This document shows positions 22,447-63,983 of a DNA stretch of 64,000 nt, one piece after another. Source of the DNA: Euprymna scolopes (taxonomy: Eukaryota); NCBI GenBank assembly GCA_053919585.1, contig CM132793.1; one strand, given 5' to 3'. The notes beneath the pieces were generated by a model. That model saw only the letters and a program-made list of their open reading frames with translations, searched no databases and was not told the origin of the DNA. The first letter of the stretch is position 1. Every line of letters begins with the position of its first letter. The translations under genes and the position numbers were made by a program.

Positions 22447-22915
22447 ATAAAAAAATCTCTATGTAGGGTGCCCCCCTCCACCATTAAACGTTTAATGGTG
22501 GAGGGGGGCACCCTACATAGAGATTTTTTTATTTTCTCTGACAGGTTTTGAATAAAATAGAATACGGGAGAATTGGACTTATCTAAGTTGCCACTTAGTG
22601 CCATGCTCTAATACCTTACCTTATAGAGTTTATAGAAATATAACGCGCGCGCGTAGAAAAACTTTCATTCATCTAATGTCTGGTGGTTCTGAAAAATAAT
22701 TTCATGCATCTCATGTCATGCGTCATGCAGAAGGAAAAATATTAAAATACAAACACATGTATGGTATTATATATATATTTATTATACTATAATATTGCAA
22801 TTACAATAATAATTCCAATAATAGTAATAATAATAGAAAGGACAGACATTAGATAGGAAAAAGTTTTTTGGCGGCCATGACACCTTAGACTTAGACCATA
22901 GATGGATTTCTTTTT
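22447..22915. repeat. Viral NS-end terminal module type A with 86-bp perfect palindrome
   Basis: Palindrome 22447-22532 with axis at 22489/22490; the module recurs at 36949, 45084 and 50927, always directly after an NS1-A-type 3' end. Confidence 0.85.
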
Positions 22916-23022
22916 TATCAGTCAGAGTCTGTCAGTAATTCCTCGCAGTACATTACCAATGTCTGCAAGGATTTTGTTTGTTTGTGCGTTATGTGTATGC
23001 GTGTGCAGTTCTCTGTCCCGTA

Positions 23023-24888: not shown

Positions 24889-25058
24889 GCCGTCTTATTT
24901 ATAATGGTTTTTCCCTTAGGTCTGCACATTCCTGCAGGATCAGATTTCGCTGACTTTGCGAATGGGATATGTGTGGCGTAAATGAAATTTTGCTGACGCA
25001 GTTTAAATTTTAGCGAAGTCAGCGTTTTTTAGTCCACGCCTCCTGTAGGGCGTGTCCT

Positions 25059-25100
25059 GTTATTTGTTCACGAACTTGCCGTGATTGTAGCCAATGGTGT
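25059..25100 (-). pseudogene. VP C-terminus (TIGYNHGKFVNK*) truncated by Gypsy sequence
   Basis: Matches the end of VP-A at 47659. Confidence 0.85.
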
Positions 25101-39224: not shown

Positions 39225-41208
39225 TCAATCGGAGTCACTGAGCACTTCTTCACATTCTAAAAATAGCTGTGACGTCGGCCCTCGTCCGTTGATTTGTCGT
39301 TGGTATATTGCTAATGTGTAGTTTATTATGTTTTTTTTTTTTTGTTTTTTTTGGTGTGACGAAGTCGTCCTCCTCCGGTTCTTCTGTTTCTGAGTCGCTG
39401 AGCACTATTACTCCGGAGATTGGCGAGTCCTCTATTACTGTGTCTTGAGACATGGTGGGTGCTGAGGGGCTGGGTTGGTTTGTTGCTGTAGGACATCTGT
39501 GTGCCTTGCAACCGTGGGTTTTACAGTACTGCGTCGGCTGGTTTTCGTCAATTTCACATGCCTCAGTCATCCAGTCCTCGACGTCGGAATCGTCTGAGAT
39601 ACGCAGGTTTTGTACCTCCTCTCCTCCCATGAGTTCTTTGAACAGTTGTCTTCGTGCCTTCATGTAACCCGCCTGTTTGTCTGGTGACAGGCCCTCTACT
39701 GCTTGGACAGTGAAGTTGGTCGATGCTGCTGGTTCCTCGATGTCTTCTTCCTCCTGGAATTGGTACGTCTGGTTCGTGTAGTCCATCACGTACTGTCTCC
39801 AGACGGTCAGCCACATTGTCGGATTGAGTTCTCGGACTCCCCATCCCTTTAGGGCAGGCATGGGCCTCTTCGTCTCGTAGAGGAACATTCGGTTGTGCAT
39901 TGCTGTTCTTTCCTGCGGGACGTGTCTCCAGGGGTCGTCGTTACTTGTAGACAGGCATGGTGTCCTCTCTAAGTATCGTTCCGCCTGGTGCTTCACGTTT
40001 ACCGCTGTTGTGGTACCTTCCAGGATGCACTTTCCCTCCTCTACATTTTGTGGTGTGAACCACATTTCGTCCGTGTAGATCAGTGTCTTGTCCACACAGG
40101 AGCCGAACGTGAAGTTGTCCGAAGCCTGACACCGCATTCGACCGCAGTTCATGAGCCCGTTTCTGATTGACCGTAACACGTAAGACTTGCCTGAGTTACT
40201 TGGTCCTGTTATGTGGAACCCGTTCTTTTTGGCCCATATCATGTGACATACTTCGAATAAGTTTCTTCCGAATTCTACCGGGTCAAAGTTGTGGTGTTGG
40301 GCCCAAACGTTGTATATGTCCAATGACTTTTGCACAGACCAATACCGGTTCCCGTCCATGCTGAAGAGGTCCTTCTTTTGCCGGATCTGTTCGAATATGG
40401 GTGTGACCTTTGTTTGGATTTGTAGGTCGCTTGCCGCTGCCTGCATGATCGGTTGAATGTTTTGGGTATTGGTAAATATGTGTTCCCATGTGTCACAGAC
40501 CTTTGCATTTGTGGATTGTTTACAGTAGAGCATGACTTTTGCCATGTCAGTACTGTTACATTTTCTCATTATATCGAGAATGAATTTATATTTTTGCCCT
40601 CTCAGGGTAGATTTTCCAGTGAGTCCTGTGTCTACCGCGGGTTCGTCCTGTTTCTTTAAGGGCTTGTCGCATATTTTTCTGTAGGTCGCTAGTTGACCGG
40701 GAGTTTCTAGGTGCCCTGCTGCTACTACTGTACGTTTTGACGGGTCCTGTGTTAGGTAACTGCAGAGCCCGTACGGGTTGTAAATTTTCTGGCATGAGAT
40801 TTGGTAGGGGTTTATCTGTCACTCGCCCTGGAGTTTTTTCATTTGCACGTAACTGTGCTCGCATGTCGGGTGGTTGTGGTGCCATGTTATCATGTGGAAG
40901 TGGTCCACGTCTGCGCAATGTTTCAAACTGCTTGGCCCTGCTACGTGGTATACTATTATGTATGGGCGCTGGTCTAGAATTCTGGCCAAGTACCCGTGGG
41001 TAGCGTTCGATGGCTGTAACGTTAGCGCCTCTTGGTAAGGTTTGGTCTCTGTCGTCCCCGGCTTAAGGCTGAACTCCTTTTCGGTTTCCCAGCGGTAGAT
41101 CCATGTGTACGGTCGGATTTGTTTGCCGTTTACAGTTTCTCCGTTGACTAAGGTATTGAAATGTTGTTGTTCTTCTCTTTGGTTGCTGGCGCTGGTCGTG
41201 GCTTCCAT
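39225..41208 (-). pseudogene. NS1: NS1 lineage B, full length with a frameshift near 40830
   Basis: DHFHMITW, GPSNSGKS, LIYTDE; ORF pieces 40819-41208 and 39250-40569. Confidence 0.9.
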
Positions 41209-41440
41209 CCTGAATGTCTGGAGCGTGTGCCTGATCGGTGGTTTATGTGCGTCTTTTATAGCAAGTATCTGCGTCGTAAGAATTAGAATCTGTTGCCGGT
41301 TTTGTAATTATCTCTGGTAGTAATTGAATTATGCTGACGTTGATGAATTTCGAAAATAGCTAATTGATTTTAGCTGACGCCTCGGAATTTAAAAAAGTAT
41401 ATATTTTGCTTACCGAGCGTTTAGTGTCTGTAGCTCCACC

Positions 41441-43288
41441 CTATTTGTTTACGAAACGCCCATAAGGCATGCCGAATATTTGACCGTTGTGGTCCCATAT
41501 GTGTGTGCCGTGATTATGAAGCATTCCTTTTGCTGATTGGCCGTGGAAATGTCTATTGGGCGGTACAATGGTGTGGTATTCGTAACTGAAGTCCGCCGAT
41601 GTTGCTGATAGTGCTTGTTTGTGGGTGGTGACTGGGACCTTCTGCGGGTGGATAAGTGCGTCACAGACTATTTCAATTTCTAGCATGTAAGTTAATTCGA
41701 AGTTGAAATATAAAATACCGGCGGTGCTGTTCGGGCGCAGTATAGGCGGAACATGTATTAGTACCATGTCTGGTGAGTCCTCGTTTGTGTAGAGCACCTT
41801 GTTAATCACTGTTCTGTCAGACATTGTTGTGCAACCGCTTGTTTGTATGTAAGTTGTCGCTCCGATGTCCACTTTTCCACTGTCCTTCTTCCCGGCGTCG
41901 CTCGTGTTTGTTTTTCTTCCTCTTTGGTGATCGAAGTTTAAGTCCGACACCTCTGTTTGTACTAGGTCCTCCTGCACTTCCTTACGTTGACGTTTTCGTG
42001 CACCCTGGCGGACGTTGTCCTCAGCTTTTCTCAGTATGGTACCGTAGGCCGGCGCGGTCGCTACCGATAAACCGCAGTCCCAGGCCGTTTTGACTCCCGA
42101 ATTTAACAGGTTAGTGATTAGTACCGGGTTTGATATCATACCTGCCTGTATTGTGTAGTTGCCCTGCATGGTAGTGTTGGTTAGTGGTCGTCTTAGTAAA
42201 CTGTGGTTTCGCCATACGTGTGTGAATGAGTCACCCTGTCGTAAGTTTTTTACGTTTGGCATTTCTCGCCAGTCGTGCAAGTCGATCATTTTCACCTGTG
42301 TTTTGTTTACTGAGTCCGAGAAGTTTCCAGTGTTTGTGATCGCATTGATTAGTTCGATCGGTGCCATGTAATTGTATGTGTAGGTTGGTAACTCTGCGTC
42401 TGCCCCTACCATGGGTTGGATTTCTGAGAAACCTTTGTTTGGGATTTTAGATATTCCTTCCAAGTTTCCGTAACCGATATATGAACCGTTGTCGATGTAG
42501 ATGTCGAAGTAGGGTTCTGGGTTTGGTACGAAGACTTCCTCGTTGTTTTTTGTCAGCCATTCACCGCATGTTATTTTCGATATTTTAAATCCTTGGCTGA
42601 CGATCCTGTACGCTGTCGCGTTTGACATTATCGCTTCCCATTTCGGCGGAGTTACCCAGGTAGTTAGGAAGTAGGGTACTATGTAGTCTTTCGATACCGG
42701 CTGTGACCATGAAAACCGGGCTGCTCCGTGTATGCCTTCCTTTGGGTCAGTGTCGTAGATCTGGAATATAGCTGCGCAATCATTCATGTTTGTCGTTTTG
42801 ACCTGGTTTTTGAAGCTCCTCTGTAAAACTACTCGTCTTACGTTGTTGTTAGTAATGGTTGGTAGCTCTCCTCCCTCCTCATTTCCTCCCCACGCTCCGC
42901 TGCCGTTGTCGTTCGCGACAGTGCTCGCCTCCGAATCGACTTCCATACCTGCTTCGCAGCTAGCAGTGTAAGTAGGATCAAGTTTAATTCGTTTAGGTGG
43001 GGGATCGAAGTAGTCGTCCAGTCCCAGGTAATGCTTTGCTCTGAGTGCCCCTCGCGATAAAGCTCCCAACAGACCTGTTCCAACAGAGTCCTTGTAGAAT
43101 TGGTCATCTGCTTCTTTGGTCTTGCCTTTTCCGTAGTTGAAATCGTGTCTTTTTGCTGCCCAGTCCAAACGATTTAGGGGAGGCAGGTATTTTTTGTAAT
43201 CGAGGTCAGTACCAGGCCCTAGGAACCTGTGGTACGGTACCGTCCACTCCGACCTCCTCGCTTTCTTCTGGTGTCTTACCGGTGGCAT
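41441..43288 (-). CDS. VP1: Capsid protein lineage B, open 615 aa, N-terminal PLA2
   Basis: FLGPG...LDWAAKRHDFNY...ADDQF; collinear with VP-A. Confidence 0.92.
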   Translation of the reverse strand: MPPVRHQKKARRSEWTVPYHRFLGPGTDLDYKKYLPPLNRLDWAAKRHDFNYGKGKTKEADDQFYKDSVGTGLLGALSRGALRAKHYLGLDDYFDPPPKRIKLDPTYTASCEAGMEVDSEASTVANDNGSGAWGGNEEGGELPTITNNNVRRVVLQRSFKNQVKTTNMNDCAAIFQIYDTDPKEGIHGAARFSWSQPVSKDYIVPYFLTTWVTPPKWEAIMSNATAYRIVSQGFKISKITCGEWLTKNNEEVFVPNPEPYFDIYIDNGSYIGYGNLEGISKIPNKGFSEIQPMVGADAELPTYTYNYMAPIELINAITNTGNFSDSVNKTQVKMIDLHDWREMPNVKNLRQGDSFTHVWRNHSLLRRPLTNTTMQGNYTIQAGMISNPVLITNLLNSGVKTAWDCGLSVATAPAYGTILRKAEDNVRQGARKRQRKEVQEDLVQTEVSDLNFDHQRGRKTNTSDAGKKDSGKVDIGATTYIQTSGCTTMSDRTVINKVLYTNEDSPDMVLIHVPPILRPNSTAGILYFNFELTYMLEIEIVCDALIHPQKVPVTTHKQALSATSADFSYEYHTIVPPNRHFHGQSAKGMLHNHGTHIWDHNGQIFGMPYGRFVNK

Positions 43289-43384: not shown

Positions 43385-43573
43385 GCAGCAATGAAGTAGT
43401 GGCACTACCCAAATTATTTAGCAGTCACAGGTCTGACGTGCAAACCTCTCGTAATTTCATCAGTCACTGATGAATACGATACAATAATCCGTGACTGATG
43501 AAATTACGAGAGGTTTGCACGTCAGACCTGTGACTGCTAAATAATTTGGGTAGTGCCACTACTTCATTGCTGC
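43385..43573. repeat. Terminal hairpin H2 of virus B (83-bp arms, 23-nt loop); copy at 57370-57558
   Basis: Arms 43385-43467 and 43491-43573 are reverse complements. Confidence 0.93.
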
Positions 43574-45083
43574 CCGGTCTGAGGAAGTCGTACCCTGGTA
43601 CAGTGAATTCTAACTTGGTCCGACGTCGCTTTCGCGGTGGAGGCATACTGCGTTGGTTTCATGCTGTATGTGTTTATATATTACTAAGTAGGTCAACATC
43701 TGTGACTATTGCGTCATGTCTATTTATAGATGTGATAATATTTTATTTATACCTAATATCTGGTTTCTAGTAATGGCACTATTACTTTTACATTGATCGA
43801 TCTAATGTATGGAGTGCAACGACTACACGACACTACCAGTGAAAAAGAAAATACAATACCAGACTGGTAGTGTTGTGTAGTCGTTGCACTCCATACATTA
43901 GATCGAACAATGTAAAAGTAAAAGTGCCATTACTAGAAACATTAGATCGATCCATGTAAAAGTAATAGTGCCACATTAGGGGATTTAATTCCAGTGTTCC
44001 CCATTCTTGTAGGTCGTCCATTGCTGTTCTGGTTGTGAAGAGGAACATTCGGTTTATCATTGCCTGTTTTTCGTTTGCTACGTGATGCCACGGCTTGTCG
44101 TTGCTCGTGGACAGGCATGGAGTTCGTTTTAGTATTCGCTCACTCTGGTGCTTGACATTTACGTAGGTGTCAGTGCCCTCAAGGATACACTTTGCCTCCT
44201 CTACGTTCTGTGGCGTAAACCACAGCTCCTCCATAAATATCAAGCTCTTGTCGACGCAGCTTCCGAAGGTGAAGTTGTCGCTTGCCTGACAGCGCATGCG
44301 ACCTGCATTCATTAAACCGTTTCTTATGCTTCGTAGTATATATGATTTCCCCGAGTTAGACGGCCCCGTGATGTGTAGCGCGGTTTTTTTTTTTCTGACG
44401 TATTTTGTGACATACCTCGAACGTACTAGTAGCGAACTCGTCGGCATCAATGTGGTGATAAGTCAGCCATTCGTCGTATATGTCCAGGGATTTCTGGACG
44501 GGCCAGTATTGATGCGTCATGGCTGAGAATAGCTCGTGTTTTTCACATATCTGTTCATGGATTGGTGTCACGTTTAATGGTGGGGTGTGTGGCGTAGTTC
44601 ATATTTTTTTAAAAATCTCTTATAAGGTTTAGAATAAAATAGAATACGTGAGAATTGGGCTGATAGCTGGCCGTATTGGTGCCTACATTACTTCCTCCTT
44701 ACCTTATATGATTGAATCCTTTTTGATTGCGTGTGTGCCTAAAACTTTGATTCATCCCAGGTCAGGTGTCATGGCCGCCGAAAAAGTTTCTTTCCTCTCA
44801 GGTCAGGTCTTCTTCTGAAAATAACTATTACATGCTTGTACCATGCTTATACATGCAAATATCATGCCATACATGCGATCGAAATTCCAATATATATAAT
44901 ACATACTCCAATATAATATTTAATATAGTTTATTATAGTAATGAATCGTACAATAGAAAAGATAGTTTTTAATTCGTTAGTATACAATGTGTGTGTTAGT
45001 AGTAATAGTAGGTCGCACCAGACCTTAGAGTGTAGAAAGTTTTTGTCCGCCATCTTGCCAGACCTTAGATACTTAAATTAACA
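43571..45083. repeat. Module M2
   Basis: Copy of M1 that lacks the 28-bp deletion. Confidence 0.92.
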
Positions 45084-45527
45084 TAAACGTTTAATGGTGG
45101 AGGGGGGGCACCCTACATAGAGATTTTTTTATTTTCTCTGACAGGTTTTGAATAAAATAGAATACGGGAGAATTGGACTTATCTAAGTTGCCACTTAGTG
45201 CCATGCTCTAATACCTTACCTTATAGAGTTTATAGAAATATAATGCGCGCGCGCGTAGAAAAACTTTCATTCATCTAATGTCTGGTGGTTCTGAAAAATA
45301 ATTTCATGCATCTCATGTCATGCAGAAGGAAAAATATTAAAATACAAACACATGTATGGTATTATATATATATATATATGTTTATTATACAATAATATTG
45401 CAATTACAATAATAATTCCAATAATAATAGTAATAATAATACAAAGAACAGACATTAGATAGGAAAAAGTTTTTTGGCGGCCATGACACCTTAGACTTAG
45501 ACCATAGATTAATTTCTTTTTTATCAG

Positions 45528-47501
45528 TCAGAGTCTGTCAGCAATTCCTCGCAGTACATTACCAATGTCTGCAAGGATTTTGTGTGTTTGTGCGTTATGT
45601 GTATGCGTGTGTGCAGTTCTCTGTCCCGTATTAATGTGAACTCGTTGATGTTTTTTTTTTTTTTTTTTTTTTTCGTCGTTGTTCTCTTTGTCGTCATCGC
45701 TGTCAGTTATTATGATCAAGTCTGTACTGTCTGTGTCTGGTGGCGCCGACGGCGAATTACTATTTGTCATCATTTCCTCTAAGTCAGAGTCTGTGAATGG
45801 TACTGTGTCCTCGGAGTCGTTTGGTGGCGTCGGACAGTTTATGGGATGTCCGTGTGTCAAACATACCTGGGCTGGCTGGTCTGGATCTAGGATGCACTGC
45901 TCGTTCATTTCAGGCAGTAAGTTGCGCCGCACGTCTCGTACTCGTAGTTTCTTCGAAGGACTGTGTTCGTCCTCCTCCTTCCACGTGTATCTTGATGAAG
46001 GTTTTGGTTGTGCGGTCAATTTTCCTGCCTTCGGGATGTAACCGTCTCGCTGGTAGTCCGTGATGTGTTTCCGCCATATTGTCAGCCACATCAGCGGGTT
46101 GAGTTCTAACGTTCCCCATCCCTTTAGGTCGTCCATCGCTGTTCGGGTTGTAAACAGGAACATCCTGTTGATCATGGCCTGTTTTTCGTTGGCCACGTGA
46201 CGCCATGGTTCGTCGTTGCTGGTGGACAAGCAGGGCGTGCGTTTTAGGATTCGCTCGCTCTGGTGCTTCACGTTCACGTAGGTGTCCGTTCCTTCTAGGA
46301 TGCACTTGGCTTCCTCGACGTTCTGTGGCGTGAACCACATTTCTTCCGTAAATATGAGGCTCTTGTCTACGCAGCTGCCGAAAGTGAAGTTGTCACTCGC
46401 CTGGCATCTCATTCTTCCCGCGTTCATCAGACCGTTTCTGATGCTGCGAAGGATGTATGATTTTCCCGAATTTGATGGTCCGGTGATGTGTAGAGCATTT
46501 TTCTTGGGCCTTATTTTGTGGCAAACCTCGAACGTCCCCGTTGCGAACTCGTCGGCGTCGATCTGGTGGTACTCCAGCCATTCGTCGTAGATGTCTAGCG
46601 ACTTTTGTACCGGCCAGTACTGGTGTGTCATAGCCGAGAATAGCTCGTGTTTCTCACGAATCTGTTCGTGGATCGGCGTGACCCGGCTCTGTATTTGGAC
46701 GTCCGTAGCTGCAGCGGCTATGATGTTCGATAGGTTTGCCGTGTTTTTATGTATGCTCGCCCAGGTCTGTCTCGTCGACGGTTTTGCCGCCCTAGCGCAG
46801 TAAATCATCAGGTCTCCGACGTCCGTGGAATTCGCCTTCTTCATGATTTTTGTGAGAAAGTCGTATTTTTGACCTCTCAGGCTGTCTGATTTGTTGGCTA
46901 GGCGCGATTCCTCGAGTTCCGGACTTGGCTCCCTGATGGTCTTCTCCGTTAGTTTCCGTAGCATAGCCAGTTGTCGTTCTGTCGTCAGGTTACCCGCCGA
47001 TAGCACCGTTCTGATGCTCGGATCCGTCGTCAAGTACGTGCAAAGCCCGTAAGGACTGTATACCTTTGGACACGTCATGGTATACGCCTGTTCCCCTCGG
47101 TCCTGCAGCGTCCTCTTCAAGCGACTGAATCCATACTCGCTGGTCGGATGCTCGAAATGCCAACTGATGACGTGGAAATGGTCCACGTCTGAGCAGTTTT
47201 TCAGTCGGCTCGGTCCTGCTTTGTGGTAGACTACAATGTTCGGCCTTTGGTCGAGCAGGTTCGCCAGCAGTGAGTTTTCGCGGTCTGTCTCCTGGAAGGT
47301 GCAAGCTTTTCGGAAGGGTGGTATGTGAGGTTGGTCAGGCTTTACGTCAAAGGAGTTTGTCCGTCGCCATCTGTAGACCCAAGTGTATGGAGTGAGTTTG
47401 CGTCCGGCGTGGGTGTTGGAAAGGATGTAGTCGTTGAAGCGGGCCTTCTCCTCGTGTTGTGTCGCTGCCTCCATCGTCGCTGTCTGAGGTATCGTTCCCA
47501 A
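45528..47501 (-). CDS. NS1: NS1-A, open ORF (probable ATG at 47474, MEAATQ)
   Basis: HUH and SF3 motifs intact; the called start is TTG; the C-terminal frame depends on poly-A length. Confidence 0.92.
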   Translation of the reverse strand: MGTIPQTATMEAATQHEEKARFNDYILSNTHAGRKLTPYTWVYRWRRTNSFDVKPDQPHIPPFRKACTFQETDRENSLLANLLDQRPNIVVYHKAGPSRLKNCSDVDHFHVISWHFEHPTSEYGFSRLKRTLQDRGEQAYTMTCPKVYSPYGLCTYLTTDPSIRTVLSAGNLTTERQLAMLRKLTEKTIREPSPELEESRLANKSDSLRGQKYDFLTKIMKKANSTDVGDLMIYCARAAKPSTRQTWASIHKNTANLSNIIAAAATDVQIQSRVTPIHEQIREKHELFSAMTHQYWPVQKSLDIYDEWLEYHQIDADEFATGTFEVCHKIRPKKNALHITGPSNSGKSYILRSIRNGLMNAGRMRCQASDNFTFGSCVDKSLIFTEEMWFTPQNVEEAKCILEGTDTYVNVKHQSERILKRTPCLSTSNDEPWRHVANEKQAMINRMFLFTTRTAMDDLKGWGTLELNPLMWLTIWRKHITDYQRDGYIPKAGKLTAQPKPSSRYTWKEEDEHSPSKKLRVRDVRRNLLPEMNEQCILDPDQPAQVCLTHGHPINCPTPPNDSEDTVPFTDSDLEEMMTNSNSPSAPPDTDSTDLIIITDSDDDKENNDEKKKKKKKHQRVHINTGQRTAHTHTHNAQTHKILADIGNVLRGIADRL

Positions 47502-47658
47502 GCCGTCCTATTTATAATGGTTTTTCCCTTAGGTCTGCACATTCTTGCAGGATCAAATTTCGCTGACTGTGCGAATGGGATATGTGTGGCGTAAATGTGA
47601 TTTTGCTGACGCGGTTTAAATTTTATCGTAGTCAGCGTTTTTTTTAGGGCGTGTCCTG

Positions 47659-49512
47659 TTACTTGTTCACGAACTTGCCGTGGTTGTAGCCAATCGTTAC
47701 ACCCGTGTGGGTGTCTTTTGCGATGTATGTGCCGTGTCCATGTAACATCCCTTTGGGGATCTGTCCGTGGAGGTGTCTGTTCGGTGCGACTATGTTGTGC
47801 AATTCGTAGTGCCAGTCGTCGTCCACACCTATCAGTGCACAATTGTGGTCGTTTACAGGAAGTTTGCTCGGATGTTTGTAAGATTCGTACCAAATCTCTA
47901 ATTCAACCATGTATGTGAGTTCGAACGTGAAATATAGTATTCCAGGTGACCCCGATGGCCGCATGATTTCTGGTACGTTGATTAGTATCATTTGTGGCGG
48001 GTCCTCCGACGTATATAGTGATTTGTTAATAACTGTCCTGTTTGCCACTGTGAAACTTCCACCTGTTTGTATGTACCCCGTACGTGCTCCGTGGTATATG
48101 TCTTTGTTTTTACTGCGTTGTTTCTTTGCGTCCTTCGGTGTTGTGTTCGCTTTACGTCCTTTCATGTGGTCAAAGTTGACGTCTGCAACCTCTGTCTGCA
48201 CCAAGTCCTCATGTAGTTCTGCTCGTCCTCTCTTTCGTGCTGCCCCGTGTGCTAAGTTGTCCTCTGCATGTTGTGCTAATGTTCCGTAGCATGGTGCTGT
48301 TGCCACTGCCACCCCTCCGTCCCATGCAGTCTTTTGGCCGTTGTGAATTGCGTTTTCCATCAGACTCGCTCCTGACAGCAGCGCACCCTGTACGGTGTAG
48401 TTACCCTCGCTCATTATGTTTGTTAGCGGACGTTTTAGTAGGCTTGAATTATCCCACTTATGCGAGAAGCTGTCGCCCTGGCGTATTTGGTAATGCGGCT
48501 GGTCACGCCAATCGTGTAGCTTGTACATACTGACATCACACGTTGTGTTGGTACCGTCAATTTTTTTACTCACTGGTAGTTTGCTTAGTAGCCGTACCGG
48601 AATTCTGTAGTTGTAGATGTAGTGCGGTAGTTCCGCCGATGCGCCGGTCGATGGCTGTATATCCTGGAATGTGTTATTTGGAATGCAGGTTAGACCCTCT
48701 AGGTTACCGTAACCGATGTATTGGCCCTTGTCGATGTACACCTGGAACCATGGCTGGGGATTTGGCACGAATACCTCCTCGTTGTTTTTGGTTAACCACT
48801 CTCCGCATATGACGTTCTTTATCTCGCAACCTATGCTCTTTACTCTGTATGCGGTTGCAGTGTTCATCAAGTGTTCCCATTGGTTCTGCTTTACCCATGT
48901 CGTTAGGAAGTATGGTACTATGTAGTCCTTTGATACCGGTTGGGCCCACGCGTATTCTCCTATGTCCTCGTATTTACCAGTCGATTCGTATTTGTGGAAC
49001 GTTGCTTTGCATGCGTTCATGTTTGAAGTTTGGATTAAGTTTCTGAAAGTTCTTTTGACTGTGTACGTGCGCTGGACGTTTCCAGTTTCTGTTTGGATGT
49101 GCGGCCCATAGTGGATACCTTCCCATCCGTTCGATCCGGATTCCGTCGACGTTTCAGCAGCACCTTCGTCCATTTGCGTCCCAGGTATATTGTCAGTGCT
49201 ATCAGCAGCAACCACGGTGGGATCACCTCGGAAATAACTGTCCAATCCAAGTGCGTGTTTTGCCTTAATAGCGGTCCTAGCGATACCTCCGATGATTCCA
49301 GTGCCCTCGGTGTTTTTGATGAATTCTTCATCCGCTTCCTCTGTACTTATGCTCGGGCCTCCGTATGCTATATCGTGTTGTTTCGCCGCTAGGTCTAGTT
49401 TGTTACGCGGGGTGAACTTAAATTTTTTGGTGTCGGTGCCCGGTCCGAGGAAGTCGTATCCAGGTACAGTGAATTCTAACTTGGTCCGACGTCGCTTTCG
49501 CGGTGGAGGCAT
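47659..49512 (-). CDS. VP1: Capsid protein A, open 617 aa with NLS and PLA2
   Basis: MPPPRKRRR; PGYDFLGPG calcium loop; DLAAKQHDIAY and ADEEF catalytic motifs. Confidence 0.93.
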   Translation of the reverse strand: MPPPRKRRRTKLEFTVPGYDFLGPGTDTKKFKFTPRNKLDLAAKQHDIAYGGPSISTEEADEEFIKNTEGTGIIGGIARTAIKAKHALGLDSYFRGDPTVVAADSTDNIPGTQMDEGAAETSTESGSNGWEGIHYGPHIQTETGNVQRTYTVKRTFRNLIQTSNMNACKATFHKYESTGKYEDIGEYAWAQPVSKDYIVPYFLTTWVKQNQWEHLMNTATAYRVKSIGCEIKNVICGEWLTKNNEEVFVPNPQPWFQVYIDKGQYIGYGNLEGLTCIPNNTFQDIQPSTGASAELPHYIYNYRIPVRLLSKLPVSKKIDGTNTTCDVSMYKLHDWRDQPHYQIRQGDSFSHKWDNSSLLKRPLTNIMSEGNYTVQGALLSGASLMENAIHNGQKTAWDGGVAVATAPCYGTLAQHAEDNLAHGAARKRGRAELHEDLVQTEVADVNFDHMKGRKANTTPKDAKKQRSKNKDIYHGARTGYIQTGGSFTVANRTVINKSLYTSEDPPQMILINVPEIMRPSGSPGILYFTFELTYMVELEIWYESYKHPSKLPVNDHNCALIGVDDDWHYELHNIVAPNRHLHGQIPKGMLHGHGTYIAKDTHTGVTIGYNHGKFVNK

Positions 49513-50926
49513 ACTGCGTTGGTTTCATGCTGTATGTGTTTATATATTACTAAGTAGGTCAACATCTGTGACTATTGCGTCATGTCTATTTATAGATGTG
49601 ATAATATTTTATTTATACCTAATGTCTGGTTTCTAGTAATGGCACTATTACTTTTACATTGATCGATCTAATGTATGGAGTGCAACGACTACACGACACT
49701 ACCAGTTGAAAAGAAAATACAATACCAGACTGGTAGTGTTGTGTAGTCGTTGCACTCCATACATTAGATCGAACAATGTAAAAGTAAAAGTGCATTTACT
49801 AGAAACATTAGATCGATCCATGTAAAAGTAATAGTGCCACATTAGGGGATTTAATTCCAGTGTTCCCCATTCTTGTAGGTCGTCCATTGCTGTTCTGGTT
49901 GTGAAGAGGAACATTCGGTTTATCATTGCCTGTTTTTCGTTTGCTACGTGATGCATGGAGTTCGTTTTAGTATTCGCTCACTCTGGTGCTTGACATTTAC
50001 GTAGGTGTCAGTGCCCTCAAGGATACACTTTGCCTCCTCTACGTTCTGTGGCGTAAACCACAGCTCCTCCATAAATATCAAGCTCTTGTCGACGCAGCTT
50101 CCGAAGGTGAAGTTGTCGCTTGCCTGACAGCGCATGCGACCTGCGTTCATTAAACCGTTTCTTATGCTTCGTAGTATATATGATTTCCCCGAGTTAGACG
50201 GCCCCGTGATGTGTAGCGCGTTTTTTTTTTTTTCTGACGTATTTTGTGACATACCTCGAACGTACTAGTAGCGAACTCGTCGGCATCAATGTGGTGATAA
50301 GTCAGCCATTCGTCGTATATGTCCAGGGATTTCTGGATGGGCCAGTATTGATGCGTCATGGCTGAGAATAGCTCGTGTTTTTCACATATCTGTTCATGGA
50401 TTGGTGTCACGTTTAATGGTGGGGTGTGTGGCGTAGTTCATATTTTTAAAAAAATCTCTTATAAGGTTTAGAATAAAATAGAATACGTGAGAATTGGGCT
50501 GATAGCTGGCCGTATTGGTGCCTACATTACTTCCTCCTTACCTTATATGATTGAATCCTTTTTGATTGCGTGTGTGCCTAAAACTTTGATTCATCCCAGG
50601 TCAGGTGTCATGGCCGCCGAAAAAGTTTCTTTCCTCTCAGGTCAGGTCTTCTTCTGAAAATAACTATTACATGCTTGTACCATGCTTATACATGCAAATA
50701 TCATGCCATACATGCGATCGAAATTCCAATATATATAATACATACTCCAATATAATATTTAATATAGTTTATTATAGTAATGAATCGTACAATAGAAAAG
50801 ATAGTTTTTAATTTGTTAGTATACAATGTGTGTGTGTGTTAGTAGTAATAGTAGGTCGCACCAGACCTTAGAGTGTAGAAAGTTTTTGTCCGCCATCTTG
50901 CCAGACCTTAGATACTTAAATTAACA
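49463..50926. repeat. Module M3
   Basis: Shares the 28-bp deletion and diagnostic SNPs with M1. Confidence 0.92.
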
Positions 50927-55193: not shown

Positions 55194-55425
55194 CCTGAAT
55201 GTCTGGAGCGTGTGCCTGATCGGTGGTTTATGTGCGTCTTTTATAGCAAGTATCTGCGTCGTAAGAATTAGAATCTGTTGCCGGTTTTGTAATTATCTCT
55301 GGTAGTAATTGAATTATGCTGACGTTGATGAATTTCGAAAATAGCTAATTGATTTTAGCTGACGCCTCGGAATTTAAAAAAGTATATATTTTGCTTACCG
55401 AGCGTTTAGTGTCTGTAGCTCCACC

Positions 55426-57273: not shown

Positions 57274-57555
57274 TGTGGTTATATATGTTGTAATTGCGTC
57301 ATTTCTATTTATAGATTACGATTATTGCGTCATTATGACGTCATCATTAGTGAAAATATTATATTAGTCGCAGCAATGAAGTAGTGGCACTACCCAAATT
57401 ATTTAGCAGTCACAGGTCTGACGTGCAAACCTCTCGTAATTTCATCAGTCACTGATGAATACGATACAATAATCCGTGACTGATGAAATTACGAGAGGTT
57501 TGCACGTCAGACCTGTGACTGCTAAATAATTTGGGTAGTGCCACTACTTCATTGC

Positions 57556-59068: not shown

Positions 59069-59197
59069 AACCAAGGAATTATTATTTCCGAATGACTATC
59101 TGACAGTACTTCGTCTGTGTATAGTGTATGTAGTATGTGTAAGTTTCCGTCTAGTTCTCTTTGTCTGATGTGCCAGAATTCATTAAGTCAATAGTCT

Positions 59198-61044
59198 TTA
59201 GCAGTGTTTTTTTTTTTTTTTTTTTGGTTGTGGTGATAACCTTTCGGCTATGTACAGTATTTGTTTGTCGCTGTCGTGGTCGTCTTCCTCGTCGCTTGAT
59301 AATTGTATGATGTCGGGTAATTCTGTATTTGTCGGGGAATTTCGTGGTGTCATCATGTCGGAGATTTCGTTGTCGTTTTGAAAGTTTAATGCGCAGTGGA
59401 CCATTTTTTTTCCATGCGTCTTGCAGTATTGCGTCGGGAATCTTTCGTCGAGTTCACAGTACCCGTACAGTGCGTCAAATTCTTCTGATAGGTTTCTTTT
59501 CACGCTGTTTGTTTTTCTTTTTTTTTTTTTTTGGCGATTCCTGGTCGTTATTGCTCGCGTTGTATCGTTTGGATGTTCTAGGTTGTTGTATATTGTCCAT
59601 TTCTATAATGGTGTATTTATTGTTTGTGTATTTGTTGATCTGTTCCCGCCAAATGGTAAGCCACATTAGTGGGTTTAGTTCGATAACCCCCCATGTTTTT
59701 AGCATGTCCATTTTACGTTTTGTCGTGTATGTGAATAATCTGTTCTGCATAGTCTTTTTTTCGGACGCGACGTGTCTCCACGGGTCGTCATTCGAGGTGC
59801 TTATGCACGGAGTCCTTTTTAGTATGCGTTCTTGTTGGTGTTTCACATTTACGTATGTGTCTGCACCTTCAAGAATGCATTTGGCCTCCTCTATGTTCTG
59901 CGGCGTAAACCACATTTCCTCTGTGAAAATGAGGCTTTTGTCGACACAGCTTCCGAATGTAAAATTATCGGAAGCCTGGCATCTCATTCTACCGCAGTTC
60001 ATGAGACCGTTTTTTATACTTCTGAGCATGTAAGATTTACTCGAGTTACTGGGTCCTGTGATATGGAACCCGTTGATTTTTGCTCGGATCTTATGGCATA
60101 CCTCGAATAGTTCTGTAGCAAATTTCTCTGGGTCGAAGGAATGATGGTTACACCATTCTTCATAAATGTCTAGCGATTTTTGAATTGACCAATATCGTGT
60201 TGTGTCATCCTGAAATAGATTTTTTTTTTGTCGTATCTGTTCCCATATAGGTGTGATTCTCGTGTGTATTTGAATGTCCGATGCTGCTGCGTGTATAATG
60301 TTTTGGAGATTCGGTGTGTTCTTATGTATATTTCTCCATGTATTTTTGTGGTGCTCTGGTGCTTGATTCTGACAGTATAGCATAATGTCTCCTATATCTG
60401 TCGAATTACACTTCTTCATCATTTTTAGGATGAAGTCGTATTTTTTGCCTCTGAGTGTGTCTCCTTTGGTGTTTAGGTCGGTGTCTTCGTCACTGATGTT
60501 CAGCAATGGTCTTTGTAGTAAGTCGCTCCAGGAAGCTTTTCTGTCTCTCCGTTGACAGGTTCCCTGCGCTTATCACCTGCCGTTTTTCTGGTTCTGCCTC
60601 AAAGTACTGGCATAGTCCGTGAGGAGAATACACTTTTGAGCATGTCATGTTGTAGGGTCTTAATGGTCTTTCGTTCAGCGCTTTTTTCAGTGCTCCGAAG
60701 CCGTACTCACATGTCGGATGGTCGTGATGCCAGCTGATCATGTGGAAGTGGTCCACGTCACTGCAATTTTTCATTTTTGATGGGCTTGCCTTGTGGTATA
60801 TACATATGTACGGTCTTTGTTCCCCAACGCTTTTAAGATATTTATGTGTATTTTTCTTTAAGTTCATGGTTAGTGTGTGTGGTAATGTGTGTAGTTCTTT
60901 TTCGTTCGACGTTATTTTGAATTCGTTTTCCGTCTCCCACCTGTAGATCCAAGTGTATGGTGTTTGTTTTTTTCCGTCCTTTGTATCCGCGAGAATGTAT
61001 TCATTCCAGTTTAATTTTTCCTCAAGTTTTGTTTGTCCGGCCAT
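59198..61044 (-). pseudogene. NS1: NS1 lineage C, full length with two frameshifts
   Basis: DHFHMISW; Walker A altered to GPSNSSKS; three ORF pieces. Confidence 0.9.
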
Positions 61045-61214: not shown

Positions 61215-62425
61215 CTACTTGTTTACGAATTTTCCGTAATGGAATCCCAATGTCTTTCCTTGGTGTCCTGATAAGTGTGTTCCGTGGTTATGTATCATGC
61301 CCTTTGCTGATTGGCTGTGGAGATGTCGATTGGGCGGGACTATGCAGTTTAGTTCGTAATTGAAACCGGCGTCCGTAGCCATCTCCGCACATGTGTGATC
61401 GTTCATTGGTAATTTTTGTGGGTGTGCAAATGATTCGTACCAGCATTCTATTTCTAACATGTACGTTGTTTCGAAAACAAAGTACAAGATACCCGTTTGT
61501 GCTGATGGTCGGAGTATTGGTGGTACATTTATCAAAATCATTTCCGGGGCGTCCTCGTTTGTATATAGTACTTTGTTAATTAACGTTCTGTTGGCTACGG
61601 TAAACGCCCCTGATGTTTGGTTATACCCTGAAATATTTTTATCGTCTTTTTCTTTTTTGCCTGTGCTGTTTGATTTTCTTCCCCTTTGGTGATCGAATGC
61701 AAGGTCGGCTACTTCTGTCATAGTCAGGTCCTCTTGTACTTCTGTTCTTTGTCGTTTTCTTGGTTTATAAGATTCTAAGTTTTCCTCTGCTTTTGTTGCA
61801 ATTGTCCCGTATTTTGGTGCTGTGGATATGTCTAGTCCGGCGTCCCAGGCGGTTGGATTTCCTCCACTTATGGATGATTGCAGTATGCTTGCACTGGAAA
61901 TCATTGCTCCTTGTATGACGTAGTTACCTTGTGTCATGATGTTAGTTATTGGTTTTCTAAGCAGACTGTGATTATGCCATATATGTGTGAAAGTGTCTCC
62001 CTGTCTTACTTTTGTGTGCGGCATCTCTCTCCAGTCGTGAAAGTTTATCATTTTTGTGTCTGTTGCTAGTGTATGTGCGTCTATTGGGGTTGTGTTTGGT
62101 AACTTGTTTAATAAATGTATCGGTGCTGCGTAGTTGTATTTATATTTTGGTAGTTCGGCAGTTGTTCCTATCATCGGTTGGATTTCGGTGAATTCATTGT
62201 TTGGTACTGTTGATATCCCTTCCAGGTTTCCGTAACCGATGTAGTTTCCTCTATCTATGAATATATCAAAGTAAGGTTGTGGATTTGGTACGAATATTTC
62301 CTCGTTATTCTTTGTTAGCCATTCCCCGCATATGATGTTGTCGAGTGTTACTCCGATGCTTTTCACTCTGTACGATGTAGCCGTGTTGAGCATCGCTTCC
62401 CATTTATTGTTTGTTACCCATGTAC
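61215..62425 (-). pseudogene. VP lineage C, 5' truncated
   Basis: 392-aa open segment ending GKFVNK; homology stops at about 62425. Confidence 0.9.
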
Positions 62426-63983
62426 TTAAAAAGTATTATTTGTCCATGTTTTAAAATTTTTATTCTCCCATCTTGGTCTGCATACATAGTTGTAAATTTT
62501 TTCAATCATAGCTTGCATGTATGAATCATTTTGTGGATCAAAATCAATTTCATTAATTGCGTTTAATGCAGAATTAAACTCTGATTCATTTTTTGCTTCT
62601 AACAGGACATATCTTGCACAAAATATATTTTTTATTGATTGTTTGTATGCATTTGGCATCATTTACAAATCTGACCAAGTTTTCCTTTAAATGTCTAGCA
62701 CATAAATACCGTGCTGCATTCCCAAATACTGCATCCAATGCTTTTACGATGGCTTTCTCTTGATCTGATCCAATCTGAATTTGATCAGAAAGATTTAAAC
62801 AAATATTTTTTTTTTTTTGCTATCTTAGATGCTATATGGCTGAAAAAAATGCGTGGTAGACTTCATAAGTTGACTTCTTATGTAAGAGTATTGGACCAAT
62901 GAATACTGGATTATTCTTGGTTGTTTTTTTTAGATATTTTTGTATTTTTAAAGTTCACTAATGTCAGAAAATAAGGACCTAAGTTGAATGTTCTATCAAT
63001 CCCAATTATAGACTTGTCATCCATACAAGAGCAAAGATCCTTAATTTGGTCGTTTGTGTAAAGTATTAGAGCTGGAATATCAGCATCTATTTTAACAACC
63101 ATCCTAACGAATCCATCATCAATTAAGGTTAAACATTCTTGTAGCTGATCAGATAAGTCTGTACTTGTTGGTTGAGAGTTTTTTTTATCTTTTCTCTATA
63201 TTTCAGATTTGTAATGACTTTGTAGTCAGCAATCTCAGTTGGCATGTTGAGGTATATCTTTTTAGTTGGCAAATCTATGTTTTCTTTGATGTTGTCTAGA
63301 GTTTCAGGATTGGTTCGTATTTTTTTTCTGCTCAAAGGTTGAATACCATTATATTGGTAGAACATAAGCTCATCCATATGTGGATTTTGTGTATCAGAAA
63401 TAACTGTAATCCGTCTTTTAAAGGTTTTATCAAATTTGTGAAGAACTTCATGTCTAATTATTGTTATTTCTGCATCGTCAGGCTGTGGTTCCATCAAGAT
63501 GAACTTTCATTTAATATTGTTTTTCTTAAAAAGAATTTGTTGTTTCTTTTATATATTACTTGGAAACTTTTCCGAATATAATAGTCAACATGGTATATCT
63601 TTTTATGAAGATCCCATTCACCACAATTGTCATAAAATGATCTTTTTATACCTATATTTTTATTTTTGTCTATTAAATCTTAACATAAATTGGCAATTAT
63701 TTTTAAGGCCACTTGGAAAATTATTTAAAATGTCTGTGTACTTCAAAAATTACTGATACAGCTTTTTACCTGAACTTATATAAGTCATGAATTTAGAAAC
63801 TCCTTTCATATCATATGCAAATTTATTGATTGGCTGATCAAAATGTTTCATCTCAATTTGATTCGAAATTTCACATGAAACTGGAGTATCATTTAGAATT
63901 TCAGCTTCATTGGTAATGCTTCCTGAATCACTACTGCTTGAATCAATGCTAATAGGGACATTTCCTTGTGAAGACTCTTCCAA
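62426..63983 (-). mobile_element. Degraded Mutator/MULE-like transposase
   Basis: IGIDRTFNLGPYFLT and WTNN motifs in collinear broken ORFs. Confidence 0.6.

What the first reader, a model, noticed from the sequence alone, without database searches (positions are those of the whole stretch)
45084..49806. Parvovirus-like lineage with reversed gene order (VP upstream of NS1, same strand)
Seen: the VP stop is followed 150-230 bp later by NS1, with its own TATA and no hairpin between, in lineages A (47659/47501), B (41441/41208), C (61215/61044) and the 25059/24888 copy; the degraded 19.4-20.8 kb pair has the same order. Known: monosense parvoviruses normally place NS before VP, and ambisense densoviruses use opposite strands. 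Inference: a distinct, possibly unclassified group. It should be compared with flatworm-associated parvo-like elements such as planarian PEVE (from memory, unverified).
Basis: partly seen in the sequence, partly recalled or inferred. Interest (0 to 1): 0.8.

Follow-up and report, generated by a model that had tools for sequence, protein, structure and literature searches.

The report
Capsid-first parvovirus integrated in host genome
The region is an intact-looking, genome-integrated copy of a parvovirus whose capsid gene lies ahead of its replication gene on the same strand, the reverse of every classified single-sense parvovirus. The same layout turns up in a broad, unnamed group of about 4-kb virus genomes in public metagenomes.

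Summary
On the minus strand, 49806-45084 reads:
- a 178-nt terminal hairpin;
- a TATA promoter;
- a 617-aa VP with an N-terminal PLA2 domain;
- a 157-nt hairpin-free spacer with its own TATA;
- a 657-aa NS1 (HUH motif plus SF3 helicase);
- about 440 nt of non-coding end, closing with the inner arm of a second, different hairpin. That hairpin is complete in a sister copy at 22447-22532.

Lineages B and C and two degraded copies have the same order. Lineage B carries its own hairpin directly upstream of its VP.

The order is not a concatemer artefact. The lineages diverged under strong purifying selection (dN/dS 0.07; synonymous sites saturated between A, B and C). Fifteen independent public contigs (NS1 20-50% identical) show capsid then NS1. 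One 4693-bp contig is bounded by both hairpins.

The nearest named relatives are unclassified bird-cloaca 'Parvoviridae sp.'. The nearest classified ones are ichthama- and chaphamaparvoviruses, at about 16-18% identity. I found no paper that states this gene order.

The window is a 64-kb array in which all parvovirus pieces share one orientation, interleaved with transposons. The host was not identified, and the planarian PEVE comparison could not be tested.

The parts
49798..49839 (-). Extra tandem copy of the 42-nt outer-arm repeat of the left hairpin. It marks the outermost edge of element A.
   Evidence: complementary to 49640-49681, and a direct repeat of 49754-49795.
49629..49806 (-). 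Left terminal hairpin of lineage A: 78-nt arms with a 22-nt loop.
   Evidence: 94% complementary. (-78.7 kcal/mol, z = -17.4). Near-identical copies lie at 43763-43940, 35649-35826 and 57748-57925.
49513..49628 (-). VP promoter and leader. It has two TATAAATA boxes (49617, 49594) and a block around TATA plus TGACGCAAT that is also present upstream of VP in lineage B and in contig L001.
47659..49512 (-). VP (capsid) gene: 617 aa, uninterrupted, with a PLA2 domain at residues 14-85.
   Evidence: A profile of it and its relatives hits solved parvovirus capsids (9me0 VP1 E 7e-14; chains that hold only the VP2/VP3 shell E 5e-8 to 1e-3). The AlphaFold model was poor (pLDDT 38).
47502..47658 (-). VP-NS1 spacer holding the NS1 promoter (TATAAATA at 47516). 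It has no hairpin and no poly(A) signal.
45528..47501 (-). NS1 gene: a 657-codon uninterrupted frame. HUH motif at residues 108-110, Walker A at 341-348. There is one possible start-codon difference from a sister copy.
   Evidence: AlphaFold model pLDDT 76. The best Foldseek match is full-length AAV2 Rep68 (E 6e-18, 513-526 columns).
45084..45527 (-). Right non-coding end. It has poly(A) signals at 45386, 45133 and 45095, and an internal inverted repeat (45259-45284 with 45449-45474). The inner arm of the right terminal hairpin (about 45089-45133) is followed by 5 nt of the return arm.
   Evidence: Compared with the complete palindrome in the sister copy.
22447..22532 (-). Complete right terminal hairpin of a sister A-lineage copy: a 43+43 nt perfect palindrome. 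AT-rich non-viral DNA follows it.
22485..25098 (-). Sister A-lineage copy, 92% nt identical to 45084-47697. NS1 has 1 frameshift. VP is reduced to its last few codons (1 truncation), next to a retrotransposon ORF.
   Evidence: NS1 against the focal copy: dN 0.025, dS 0.34, ratio 0.07.
43385..43573 (-). Left terminal hairpin of lineage B: 87-nt arms with a 15-nt loop. It lies directly upstream of the B VP. A duplicate is at 57370-57558.
   Evidence: 99% complementary. (-108.9 kcal/mol, z = -29).
41441..43288 (-). Lineage B VP: 615 aa, uninterrupted, 51% identical to the A VP. An identical duplicate is at 55426-57273.
39250..41223 (-). Lineage B NS1, 49% identical to the A NS1. It is broken by 1 in-frame stop and has no frameshift. 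The duplicate at 53211-55208 is in the same state.
61215..62435 (-). Lineage C VP, 58% identical to the A VP. About the first 200 residues are missing (1 truncation).
59306..61044 (-). Lineage C NS1. It is broken by at least 2 frameshifts. No in-frame stop falls within the matched pieces.
43971..45083 (-). Neighbour of element A. It is a 512-bp right-end-like unit of another sublineage followed by an NS1 fragment (residues 274-472). The same module precedes every A-type hairpin.
   Evidence: The fragment is 76-80% nt but 91-95% aa identical to the focal NS1.

Best explanation
Window 45084-49839 (minus strand) is one complete germline-integrated genome of a linear parvovirus with unlike ends and both genes on one strand. 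Its native gene order is capsid first: left hairpin, VP, NS1, right hairpin, about 4.75 kb in all.

Shown:
- both reading frames are whole;
- VP carries a PLA2 domain and is homologous to solved parvovirus capsid proteins;
- NS1 has an HUH motif, an SF3 helicase and a Rep68-like two-domain fold;
- unlike hairpins bound the unit;
- the order is shared by three lineages in the window that diverged under purifying selection, and by distant relatives elsewhere.

Inferred:
- VP is transcribed from the TATA promoter next to the left hairpin, and NS1 from the TATA promoter in the 157-nt spacer.
- The only poly(A) signals lie downstream of NS1. The two transcripts would therefore be nested and share a 3' end. 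That is the mirror image of the AAV arrangement, in which the replication-gene transcripts run through the capsid gene.
- NS1 would bind and nick at the terminal hairpins for rolling-hairpin replication. An RTGGCAC motif found only in the terminal regions is a candidate binding site.

The 64-kb array of co-oriented pieces is best explained by repeated entry of related genomes into resident copies, at or near the hairpins. Two rounds of tandem duplication followed, with units of 5.9 kb and 14 kb.
For: Anatomy of copy A.

Right hairpin, complete in the sister copy and followed by non-viral DNA.

Lineage B hairpin directly upstream of its VP.

Spacers unstructured.

Capsid homology:
- the VP profile hits solved parvovirus capsids;
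- the short capsids of relatives hit the PmMDV and PstDNV capsids;
- the two capsid groups are homologous (hhalign 99.5%, E 1e-22).

NS1.

Selection:
- NS1 of A against the 23-25 kb copy gives dN/dS 0.07;
- A, B and C have pS 0.72-0.82 against pN 0.27-0.33.

Same order outside this genome:
- three Logan contigs without DNA;
- L001, L002, L003, L004, L005, L009, L010, L013, L017, L018, L019 and L020;
- L013 has a 340-nt left hairpin before VP and a 112-nt perfect palindrome after NS1, at the two contig ends, and its upstream ORF is a VP homologue;
- no contig shows a circular signature.

Array structure.
Against: - No transcript, small-RNA or virion data are available, so promoters, poly(A) use and replication are inferred from motifs.
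- The catalytic tyrosine motif of the nuclease domain was not located.
- The VP three-dimensional model failed (pLDDT 38), so the jelly-roll fold rests on sequence-profile homology.
- The focal right hairpin is cut at its axis.
- The focal NS1 frame may not start where a sister copy starts.
- The distance tree of the helicase domain is star-like, so monophyly of the capsid-first genomes is not shown. One ambisense genome (L021) falls inside the same radiation.
- Most metagenomic contigs lack their ends.
- L020 is a perfect inverted dimer, which could be an assembly product.
Confidence: 0.8

Rival explanations
1. The capsid-then-NS1 adjacency is only the junction of a head-to-tail concatemer of an ordinary NS-then-VP parvovirus, so the true unit genome starts with NS1.
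For: The window does hold tandem arrays (5.9-kb and 14-kb periods). Parvoviruses are known to integrate as concatemers (general knowledge).
Against: - Hairpins lie upstream of VP and downstream of NS1, never between the two genes.
- The spacers are short (157-232 nt), carry TATA boxes and share motifs between lineages whose synonymous sites are saturated.
- Distant relatives have spacers of 0-216 nt.
- L013 is bounded by both hairpins in the capsid-first order.
Confidence: 0.03
2. The copies are a parvovirus-derived intragenomic mobile element, a 'parvovirus-like transposon' like the one described in an acorn worm. Such an element would multiply inside the genome without a particle stage.
For: - There are many copies and lineages in one locus, and some are nested in others. 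For example, the B hairpin begins inside an A-type VP.
- A similar clustered, multi-copy element with NS1 and PLA2-VP ORFs and a 5' hairpin was reported in Saccoglossus (PMC3198968).
Against: - The capsid gene is as strongly conserved as NS1 (VP pN 0.07 against pS 0.53 between sublineages; pN about 0.3 with saturated pS between A, B and C). That implies selection on particle formation.
- Relatives occur as stand-alone contigs of about 4 kb in ocean and other sequence sets and, by name, in bird-cloaca samples.
Confidence: 0.12
3. The locus is a one-strand small-RNA (piRNA-type) cluster that has trapped parvovirus integrations and retains them as an immune memory. The intact copy is incidental. 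This reading concerns the locus and does not exclude the main explanation of the element.
For: - All 26 parvovirus-derived stretches, and 21 of 22 ORFs of 200 aa or more (transposon ORFs included), lie on the minus strand.
- Viral fragments of many ages are interleaved with retrotransposon and DNA-transposon remnants.
Against: - Tandem duplication and homology-guided entry into resident copies would also give a single orientation.
- No small-RNA data were available.
- Rfam and tRNA scans found nothing.
Confidence: 0.25

Closest known systems
Unclassified 'Parvoviridae sp.' from bird cloacal viromes (Turdus hortulorum, Motacilla cinerea, Emberiza spodocephala; study PMC9896142)
   Same: These are the nearest named NS1 proteins. 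By sequence, P0046 = QTE03882.1 (E 6e-32, 30% identity over the matched stretch). By structure search, E 7e-32 to 9e-29 at 19-23% identity. That paper describes them as a divergent branch outside the established subfamilies.
   Different: NS1 identity is far below the genus level. The paper calls their organisation 'monosense or ambisense' and says nothing about gene order. I could not read their genomes, so their order is unknown to me. They come from gut contents and are not integrated.
Hamavirinae (Ichthamaparvovirus, Chaphamaparvovirus)
   Same: These are the nearest classified NS1 proteins in the structure search (E 6e-26 to 1e-21). Their genomes are also small, about 4 kb, with both genes on one strand.
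   Different: They run NS then VP, and their VP has no PLA2 (and general knowledge). NS1 identity is only 15-18%.
Penaeus monodon metallodensovirus (Metallovirinae) and the shrimp IHHNV/PstDNV capsids
   Same: The short, PLA2-less capsids of the capsid-first relatives L003, L004 and L010 match these solved capsids (6wh3 E 3e-9; 3n7x E 7e-4). They are in turn homologous to the window's VP.
   Different: The window's VP is longer and has a PLA2 domain. The gene layouts of those viruses are not capsid-first. For IHHNV that rests on my general knowledge. For PmMDV the review says only 'unique genome organization'.
Adeno-associated virus (Dependoparvovirus)
   Same: - The NS1 model matches Rep68 over both domains, and the helicase matches Rep40 at E 1e-27.
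- VP1 has an N-terminal PLA2, and the VP profile matches AAV capsids.
- AAV has nested transcripts with a shared 3' end and integrates as arrays (general knowledge).
   Different: AAV has identical ends, and Rep lies upstream of Cap. Here the ends differ and the cassettes are swapped, so the long transcript would be the capsid one.
Acorn-worm parvovirus-like repeat, planarian PIVE and PEVE (Liu et al. 2011, PMC3198968)
   Same: The acorn-worm repeat is integrated and multi-copy, with an NS1 ORF, a PLA2-bearing VP ORF and a 5' palindromic hairpin. Rep and capsid hits alternate in clusters on single scaffolds, as in this window.
   Different: - Its Rep hits are about 2.5 kb with gaps of about 480 bp, against 1.97 kb and 157 bp here.
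- Strand and order are not given in the text.
- Homology to the window was not tested.
- PEVE, from memory, is a 7.6-kb extrachromosomal element with two unique regions flanked by inverted repeats. That is a different architecture.

Membership tests
Parvoviridae | NS1 with a superfamily-3 helicase domain | tested here: met
   Pfam Parvo_NS1 E 1e-19. The profile hits AAV Rep40 at E 1.5e-27 and B19 NS1 at E 2e-21. Walker A lies at 341-348, and the helicase columns are invariant across relatives.
Parvoviridae | NS1 N-terminal HUH (rolling-circle) endonuclease domain | tested here: met
   An H-F-H motif at residues 108-110 is kept in 88% of 17 relatives. The model aligns to full-length Rep68, origin-binding/nuclease domain included, over 513-526 columns. 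The catalytic tyrosine motif was not pinned down.
Parvoviridae | Capsid protein of the parvovirus jelly-roll type | tested here: met
   The VP profile matches solved parvovirus capsids, including chains that hold only the shell domain (E 5e-8 to 1e-3). The fold itself is not confirmed, because the AlphaFold model had pLDDT 38.
Parvoviridae | Terminal palindromic hairpins bounding a linear genome of about 4-6 kb | tested here: met
   Left hairpin 49629-49806 (z = -17). The right 43+43 palindrome is complete in the sister copy at 22447-22532. The unit is about 4.75 kb.
Parvoviridae | Single-stranded DNA packaged in T=1 particles | not testable with these tools
   Only integrated double-stranded sequence and assembled contigs are available.
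Parvoviridae | Typical cassette pattern: NS upstream of VP on one strand, or the two on opposite strands | tested here: not met
   VP is upstream of NS1 on the same strand in A, B and C and in 15 outside contigs. This is a customary pattern and not a strict criterion, so it does not exclude family membership.
An established Parvoviridae subfamily or genus | Robust NS1 monophyly with classified members. Genus level is about 35-40% NS1 identity over 80% coverage (criterion as quoted in PMC11357303). | tested here: inconclusive
   The best classified matches have 15-18% identity. No reference sequences could be brought in for a tree, and my distance tree of unnamed relatives is star-like. By the identity rule, A, B and C (49-65% NS1 identity) would be one genus-level group, separate from every other sequence found.
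Endogenous viral element | Viral sequence joined to non-viral host DNA or transposons, with decayed copies alongside | tested here: met
   The right hairpin of the sister copy abuts AT-rich non-viral DNA. Retrotransposon and DDE-transposase ORFs lie between copies. Most copies carry stops, frameshifts or truncations.
Planarian PEVE / PIVE | Sequence homology of the helicase protein, and a two-unique-region architecture with inverted repeats | not tested
   No PEVE or PIVE sequence was returned by any search, and the paper is not held. Only a second-hand description in PMC3198968 was read.
One-strand piRNA cluster | Co-oriented transposon and virus fragments that give rise to strand-biased small RNAs | tested here: inconclusive
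   The orientation criterion is met (26 of 26 viral stretches on the minus strand). Small RNAs cannot be tested here.

The most novel reading that the evidence does not exclude
Capsid-first, single-sense parvoviruses with unlike ends form a deep and so far undescribed lineage of Parvoviridae, at subfamily or multi-genus level.
- The lineage includes both PLA2-bearing and PLA2-less capsids.
- It is widespread: ocean plankton, bird gut contents, invertebrate sequencing runs.
- It enters host germlines repeatedly at resident copies, building co-oriented arrays.
- The swapped cassettes imply a transcription programme in which the capsid promoter is next to the hairpin and the replication gene is served by an internal promoter.
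Probability: 0.45. Interest if true: 0.75.

Novelty: new variant of a known kind. Interest (0 to 1): 0.62.

Why it matters
'NS on the left, VP on the right' (or opposite strands) is treated as the canonical parvovirus plan. It is used as supporting evidence when new genomes are assigned to the family (for example PMC13426907).

What a capsid-first clade would mean:
- The plan is not fixed.
- It raises a concrete question about how early and late gene expression is ordered when the capsid promoter is the one next to the terminal hairpin.
- It adds a PLA2-bearing capsid lineage outside the two subfamilies in which that domain is thought to have been acquired (PMC13426907).
- It warns annotators that contigs of this group may be mis-oriented, or their order overlooked.

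The locus itself is also of interest. Several lineages and sublineages, each diverged under purifying selection, are stacked in one orientation. That makes it a natural record of repeated virus entry into one site, and a candidate small-RNA locus.

Tried and rejected
- **Concatemer permutation:** rejected (see rival explanations).
- **Circular genomes, which would make order meaningless:** no terminal overlap in any capsid-first contig.
- **IMG/VR scan with the NS1 profile:** returned only three papillomavirus-sized contigs of about 8 kb.
- **Third word-indexed protein search, with the NS1 profile:** added no named or distant hits.
- **Cluster look-ups of 30 relatives:** gave one name only.
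- **VP structure prediction from 7 sequences:** failed (pLDDT 38). A deeper capsid alignment could not be submitted, because it holds locus-derived sequences that the tool does not accept.
- **Host identification:** failed. There are no tRNA or Rfam hits, all close homologues come from unnamed Logan runs, and the transposon ORFs are uninformative.
- **Ten literature searches**: no statement of a capsid-first order. The library lacks most subscription journals and ICTV proposals, so this is absence of evidence only.
- **PEVE paper:** not held.
- **Monophyly of the capsid-first genomes:** not resolved by a neighbour-joining tree on 191 helicase columns. A first tree script got no answer.
- **RTGGCAC terminal motif:** 3 observed against 0.9 expected in element A. 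This is suggestive by position only.
Full report
**1. What is at the coordinates**

All large reading frames in 44-51 kb are on the minus strand. Reading that strand from high to low coordinates, the elements are:
- **49839-49798:** a 42-nt repeat.
- **49806-49629:** an imperfect palindrome with 78-nt arms and a 22-nt loop. It folds at -78.7 kcal/mol against -19.4 for shuffles, z = -17.4.
- **49617 and 49594:** two TATAAATA boxes.
- **49512-47659:** a 617-aa frame whose residues 14-85 match the parvoviral phospholipase A2 domain (PF08398, E 6e-10).
- **47658-47502:** a 157-nt spacer with TATAAATA at 47516.
- **47501-45528:** a 657-codon frame matching Parvo_NS1 (E 1e-19).
- **45527-45084:** a non-coding tail.

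The spacer folds no better than shuffled sequence (z = -1.2).

The tail ends with a sequence that forms a perfect 43+43-nt palindrome in a 92%-identical sister copy (22447-22532). AT-rich non-viral DNA follows that palindrome. In the focal copy the palindrome is cut 5 nt past its axis, exactly at 45084.

**2. The other copies**

Searching the window with the two focal proteins finds 9 VP-derived and 17 NS1-derived stretches. All are on the minus strand.
- **Lineage B** (VP 51% and NS1 49% identical to A) has its own hairpin at 43573-43385: 87-nt arms, 99% complementary, z = -29. The hairpin is followed by a TATA box and then VP. A 232-nt unstructured spacer with a TATA-like box comes next, and then NS1.
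- **Lineage C** (61215/61044) has a 170-nt spacer with a TATA-like box.
  - The focal copy has both frames whole, with one possible start-codon difference from a sister copy.
  - B has VP whole and NS1 with 1 in-frame stop, in both duplicates.
  - C has VP lacking about its first 200 residues (1 truncation) and NS1 with at least 2 frameshifts.
  - The 23-25 kb copy has NS1 with 1 frameshift and VP almost wholly missing.
  - The remaining stretches are fragments with 0-7 stops and 1-3 frames each.

**3. The proteins**

*NS1*
- It has an H-F-H motif at 108-110 (kept in 88% of 17 relatives) and Walker A at 341-348.
- A profile of NS1 and its relatives hits AAV Rep40/Rep68 (E 1.5e-27) and B19 NS1 (E 2e-21).
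- An AlphaFold model from 46 sequences reached pLDDT 76, and above 94 in the helicase.
- Its best solved match is full-length AAV2 Rep68 over 513-526 columns, E 6e-18. Both the origin-binding/nuclease domain and the helicase domain are therefore of the Rep type.

*VP*
- The 7-sequence model was poor (pLDDT 38).
- A profile of VP with more distant relatives hits solved parvovirus capsids: 9me0 VP1 at E 7e-14, AAV VP1 proteins, and chains holding only the shell domain at E 5e-8 to 1e-3 over profile positions 131-307.
- The short capsid ORFs of relatives L003, L004 and L010 hit the PmMDV capsid (E 3e-9) and the PstDNV capsid (E 7e-4). They are homologous to the window's VP group (hhalign 99.5%, E 1e-22 over 336 columns).

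**4. Is the order native or a permutation?**

Three lines of evidence say it is native.

(a) *Hairpin position.* Hairpins lie outside the gene pair and never between the genes, in both A and B.

(b) *Selection.* The lineages did not arise by decay after a single integration.
- NS1 of the focal copy against the 23-25 kb copy gives dN 0.025, dS 0.34, ratio 0.07.
- Between A, B and C the synonymous differences are saturated (pS 0.72-0.82) while pN is 0.27-0.33.
- Recent duplicates give ratios of 0.5-0.6 at dS 0.01-0.03.
- The capsid-then-NS1 adjacency, the spacer promoters and the hairpin-proximal VP promoter block were therefore all kept while the lineages evolved as functional genomes.

(c) *Relatives elsewhere have the same order.*
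- Close homologues (about 50% identical) exist only in Logan assemblies. Seven of their contigs were examined: ERR12921337, ERR12921338, ERR12921340, ERR12921341, ERR3431203, ERR14857108 and SRR8281668. All run VP then NS1.
- An exhaustive HMMER search with NS1 gave 1329 hits. Every relative at E of about 1e-22 or better whose contig I could read has a capsid ORF directly upstream of NS1 on the same strand, with gaps of 0-216 nt. These are L003, L004, L005, L009, L010, L013, L017 and L018. L020 shows the same order with a wider gap of about 355 nt. The contigs are 3.5-4.8 kb.
- Their upstream ORFs carry PLA2 (L005, L017) or weak IHHNV-capsid similarity (L003, L010), or are VP homologues by hhalign (L013 92%, L020 96%).
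- L013 (4693 bp) begins with a 340-nt hairpin (151-nt arms) just before VP. It ends with a 56+56 perfect palindrome after NS1. This is the same architecture as lineage A, on a contig whose two ends are the hairpins.
- L020, a Tara Oceans scaffold, is a perfect inverted dimer of a 4786-nt unit joined beyond the NS1 end. That is either a replicative-form-like molecule or an assembler's fold-back at a terminal hairpin.
- No capsid-first contig has a circular signature.
- More distant relatives (L014-L016 at E about 1e-13; L021 at E 3e-21) are ambisense, and L021 has inverted terminal repeats.

**5. How it probably works** (inference from anatomy)

- The VP promoter sits within about 100 nt of the left hairpin. 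It includes a block around the TATA box that is also present in B and in L001.
- The NS1 promoter lies in the spacer.
  - The spacers of A and B each contain two copies of a CGTCAGC-containing 12-mer.
  - The C spacer has a TGACGTCA palindrome.
- Element A has no AATAAA or ATTAAA between VP and NS1. It has three after NS1. The capsid transcript would therefore run through NS1, and both messages would end together. That is the mirror image of AAV.
- RTGGCAC occurs three times in element A, all in the terminal regions. The related RTGGCAY occurs five times in L013, also all in its termini. It is a candidate NS1 recognition element, weak statistically but consistent in position.

**6. The array**

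- 59069-45084 and 45083-34600 are tandem copies of a 14-kb unit.
  - They are 99-100% identical everywhere except the first ~930 bp of the A-type VP, where identity falls to 79-90% (pN 0.07, pS 0.53).
  - Two different sublineage capsid genes are thus joined to the same hairpin.
- Inside the unit is a 5.9-kb sub-repeat with three parts:
  - hairpin, VP, NS1 and right end;
  - a right-end-like unit of another sublineage;
  - an NS1 fragment (residues 274-472) of yet another sublineage, 76-80% nt but 91-95% aa identical.
- In one sub-repeat, lineage B, starting with its complete hairpin, replaces most of the A-type VP and the first part of NS1.
- The simplest reading is repeated entry of related genomes into resident copies at or near the hairpins. 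This would also explain the uniform orientation.
- A one-strand small-RNA cluster is an alternative or additional reading that cannot be tested here.

**7. Comparison with what is known**

- *Nearest named proteins:* unclassified 'Parvoviridae sp.' from bird cloaca. The source paper places such genomes outside the subfamilies and calls them 'monosense or ambisense', without mentioning order.
- *Nearest classified:* ichthama- and chaphamaparvoviruses at 15-18% identity.
- *Current taxonomy:* a 2026 overview lists six subfamilies and speaks of a 'canonical genome organization'. None of the ten full-text searches found a capsid-first description, but the library is incomplete.
- *Integrated form:* the closest prior art is the acorn-worm parvovirus-like repeat of Liu et al. 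2011. It has NS1 and PLA2-VP ORFs, a 5' hairpin, more than 50 copies, and clustered Rep and capsid hits. Homology to it, and to PEVE or PIVE, was not tested.
- *PLA2:* the same 2026 paper holds that PLA2 acquisition is limited to two subfamilies plus one transfer. A PLA2-bearing VP in this unclassified clade would be a further case.

**8. Verdict**

- Family membership is met on NS1, capsid homology, hairpins and size. The customary cassette order is not met.
- I rate it a new variant of a known kind. The main residual doubt about novelty is that specialists or database records may already have noted the order somewhere I could not search.
- The host organism remains unidentified.

- One search printed the bounds of individual tblastn pieces for broken copies. 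This implicitly locates frame changes. From then on, only counts were printed.
- None of this is repeated here.
- Consensus lines printed by the alignment tools were not used.

Noticed in passing
window 1-64000: All 26 parvovirus-derived stretches, and 21 of 22 ORFs of 200 aa or more (transposon ORFs included), are on the minus strand. This looks like a one-strand cluster (piRNA-type?), or is a by-product of tandem duplication.
   Followed up: partly
window 34600-59069: A 14-kb tandem duplication that is 99-100% identical; the B-lineage VP is identical over 615 codons. The exception is the first ~930 bp of the A-type VP, at 79-90%. This could reflect recombination or repeated entry at the hairpin. 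Assembly duplication is not excluded.
   Followed up: partly
window 43971-45083 (also 35857-36948, 49837-50926, 57956-59069): A module sits just outside every A-type left hairpin. It is made of a right-end-like 512-bp unit followed by an NS1 helicase fragment (residues 274-472). Its origin is unexplained.
   Followed up: partly
window 21192-22103: A 303-aa ORF with an SF3 helicase. It scores better against the papillomavirus E1 helicase model (E 3e-14) than against Parvo_NS1 (E 3e-11), and is only about 28% identical to the focal NS1. It looks like a fourth, much more divergent lineage in the same array.
   Followed up: no
window 25311-26294; 5253-6068; 2826-3557: Transposon remnants. There is an ORF with gag, reverse-transcriptase and RNase H pieces next to the truncated VP of the sister copy. 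There is also an IS1595/Merlin-type DDE transposase ORF, and an ORF with DUF5641 plus a PHD finger.
   Followed up: partly
window 30058-30250: An inverted repeat with 72-nt arms (90% complementary) and a 49-nt loop, in an AT-rich stretch with no parvovirus similarity nearby.
   Followed up: no
window 45084-45530 and 44572-45083: Both right-end units keep a splice-acceptor-like motif followed further on by a splice-donor-like motif. Each also has an inverted repeat around an AT-rich core with a (TA)n run. The fold of the unit is only modestly better than shuffles (z = -3).
   Followed up: partly
L020:1-9572: This Tara Oceans scaffold is a perfect inverted dimer of a 4786-nt capsid-then-NS1 unit. 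In addition, its first 55 nt recur inside NS1 (3820-3874). That may point to deleted forms or to an assembly-graph cycle.
   Followed up: partly
L014:1-5747, L015:1-4505: Ambisense distant relatives whose contigs repeat themselves with a 3909-nt period. They may be concatemers or circular forms.
   Followed up: no
L019:1-5245: A close-clade contig (SRR8281668) in which VP is split into two ORFs. About 1 kb with two extra small ORFs lies between VP and NS1.
   Followed up: no
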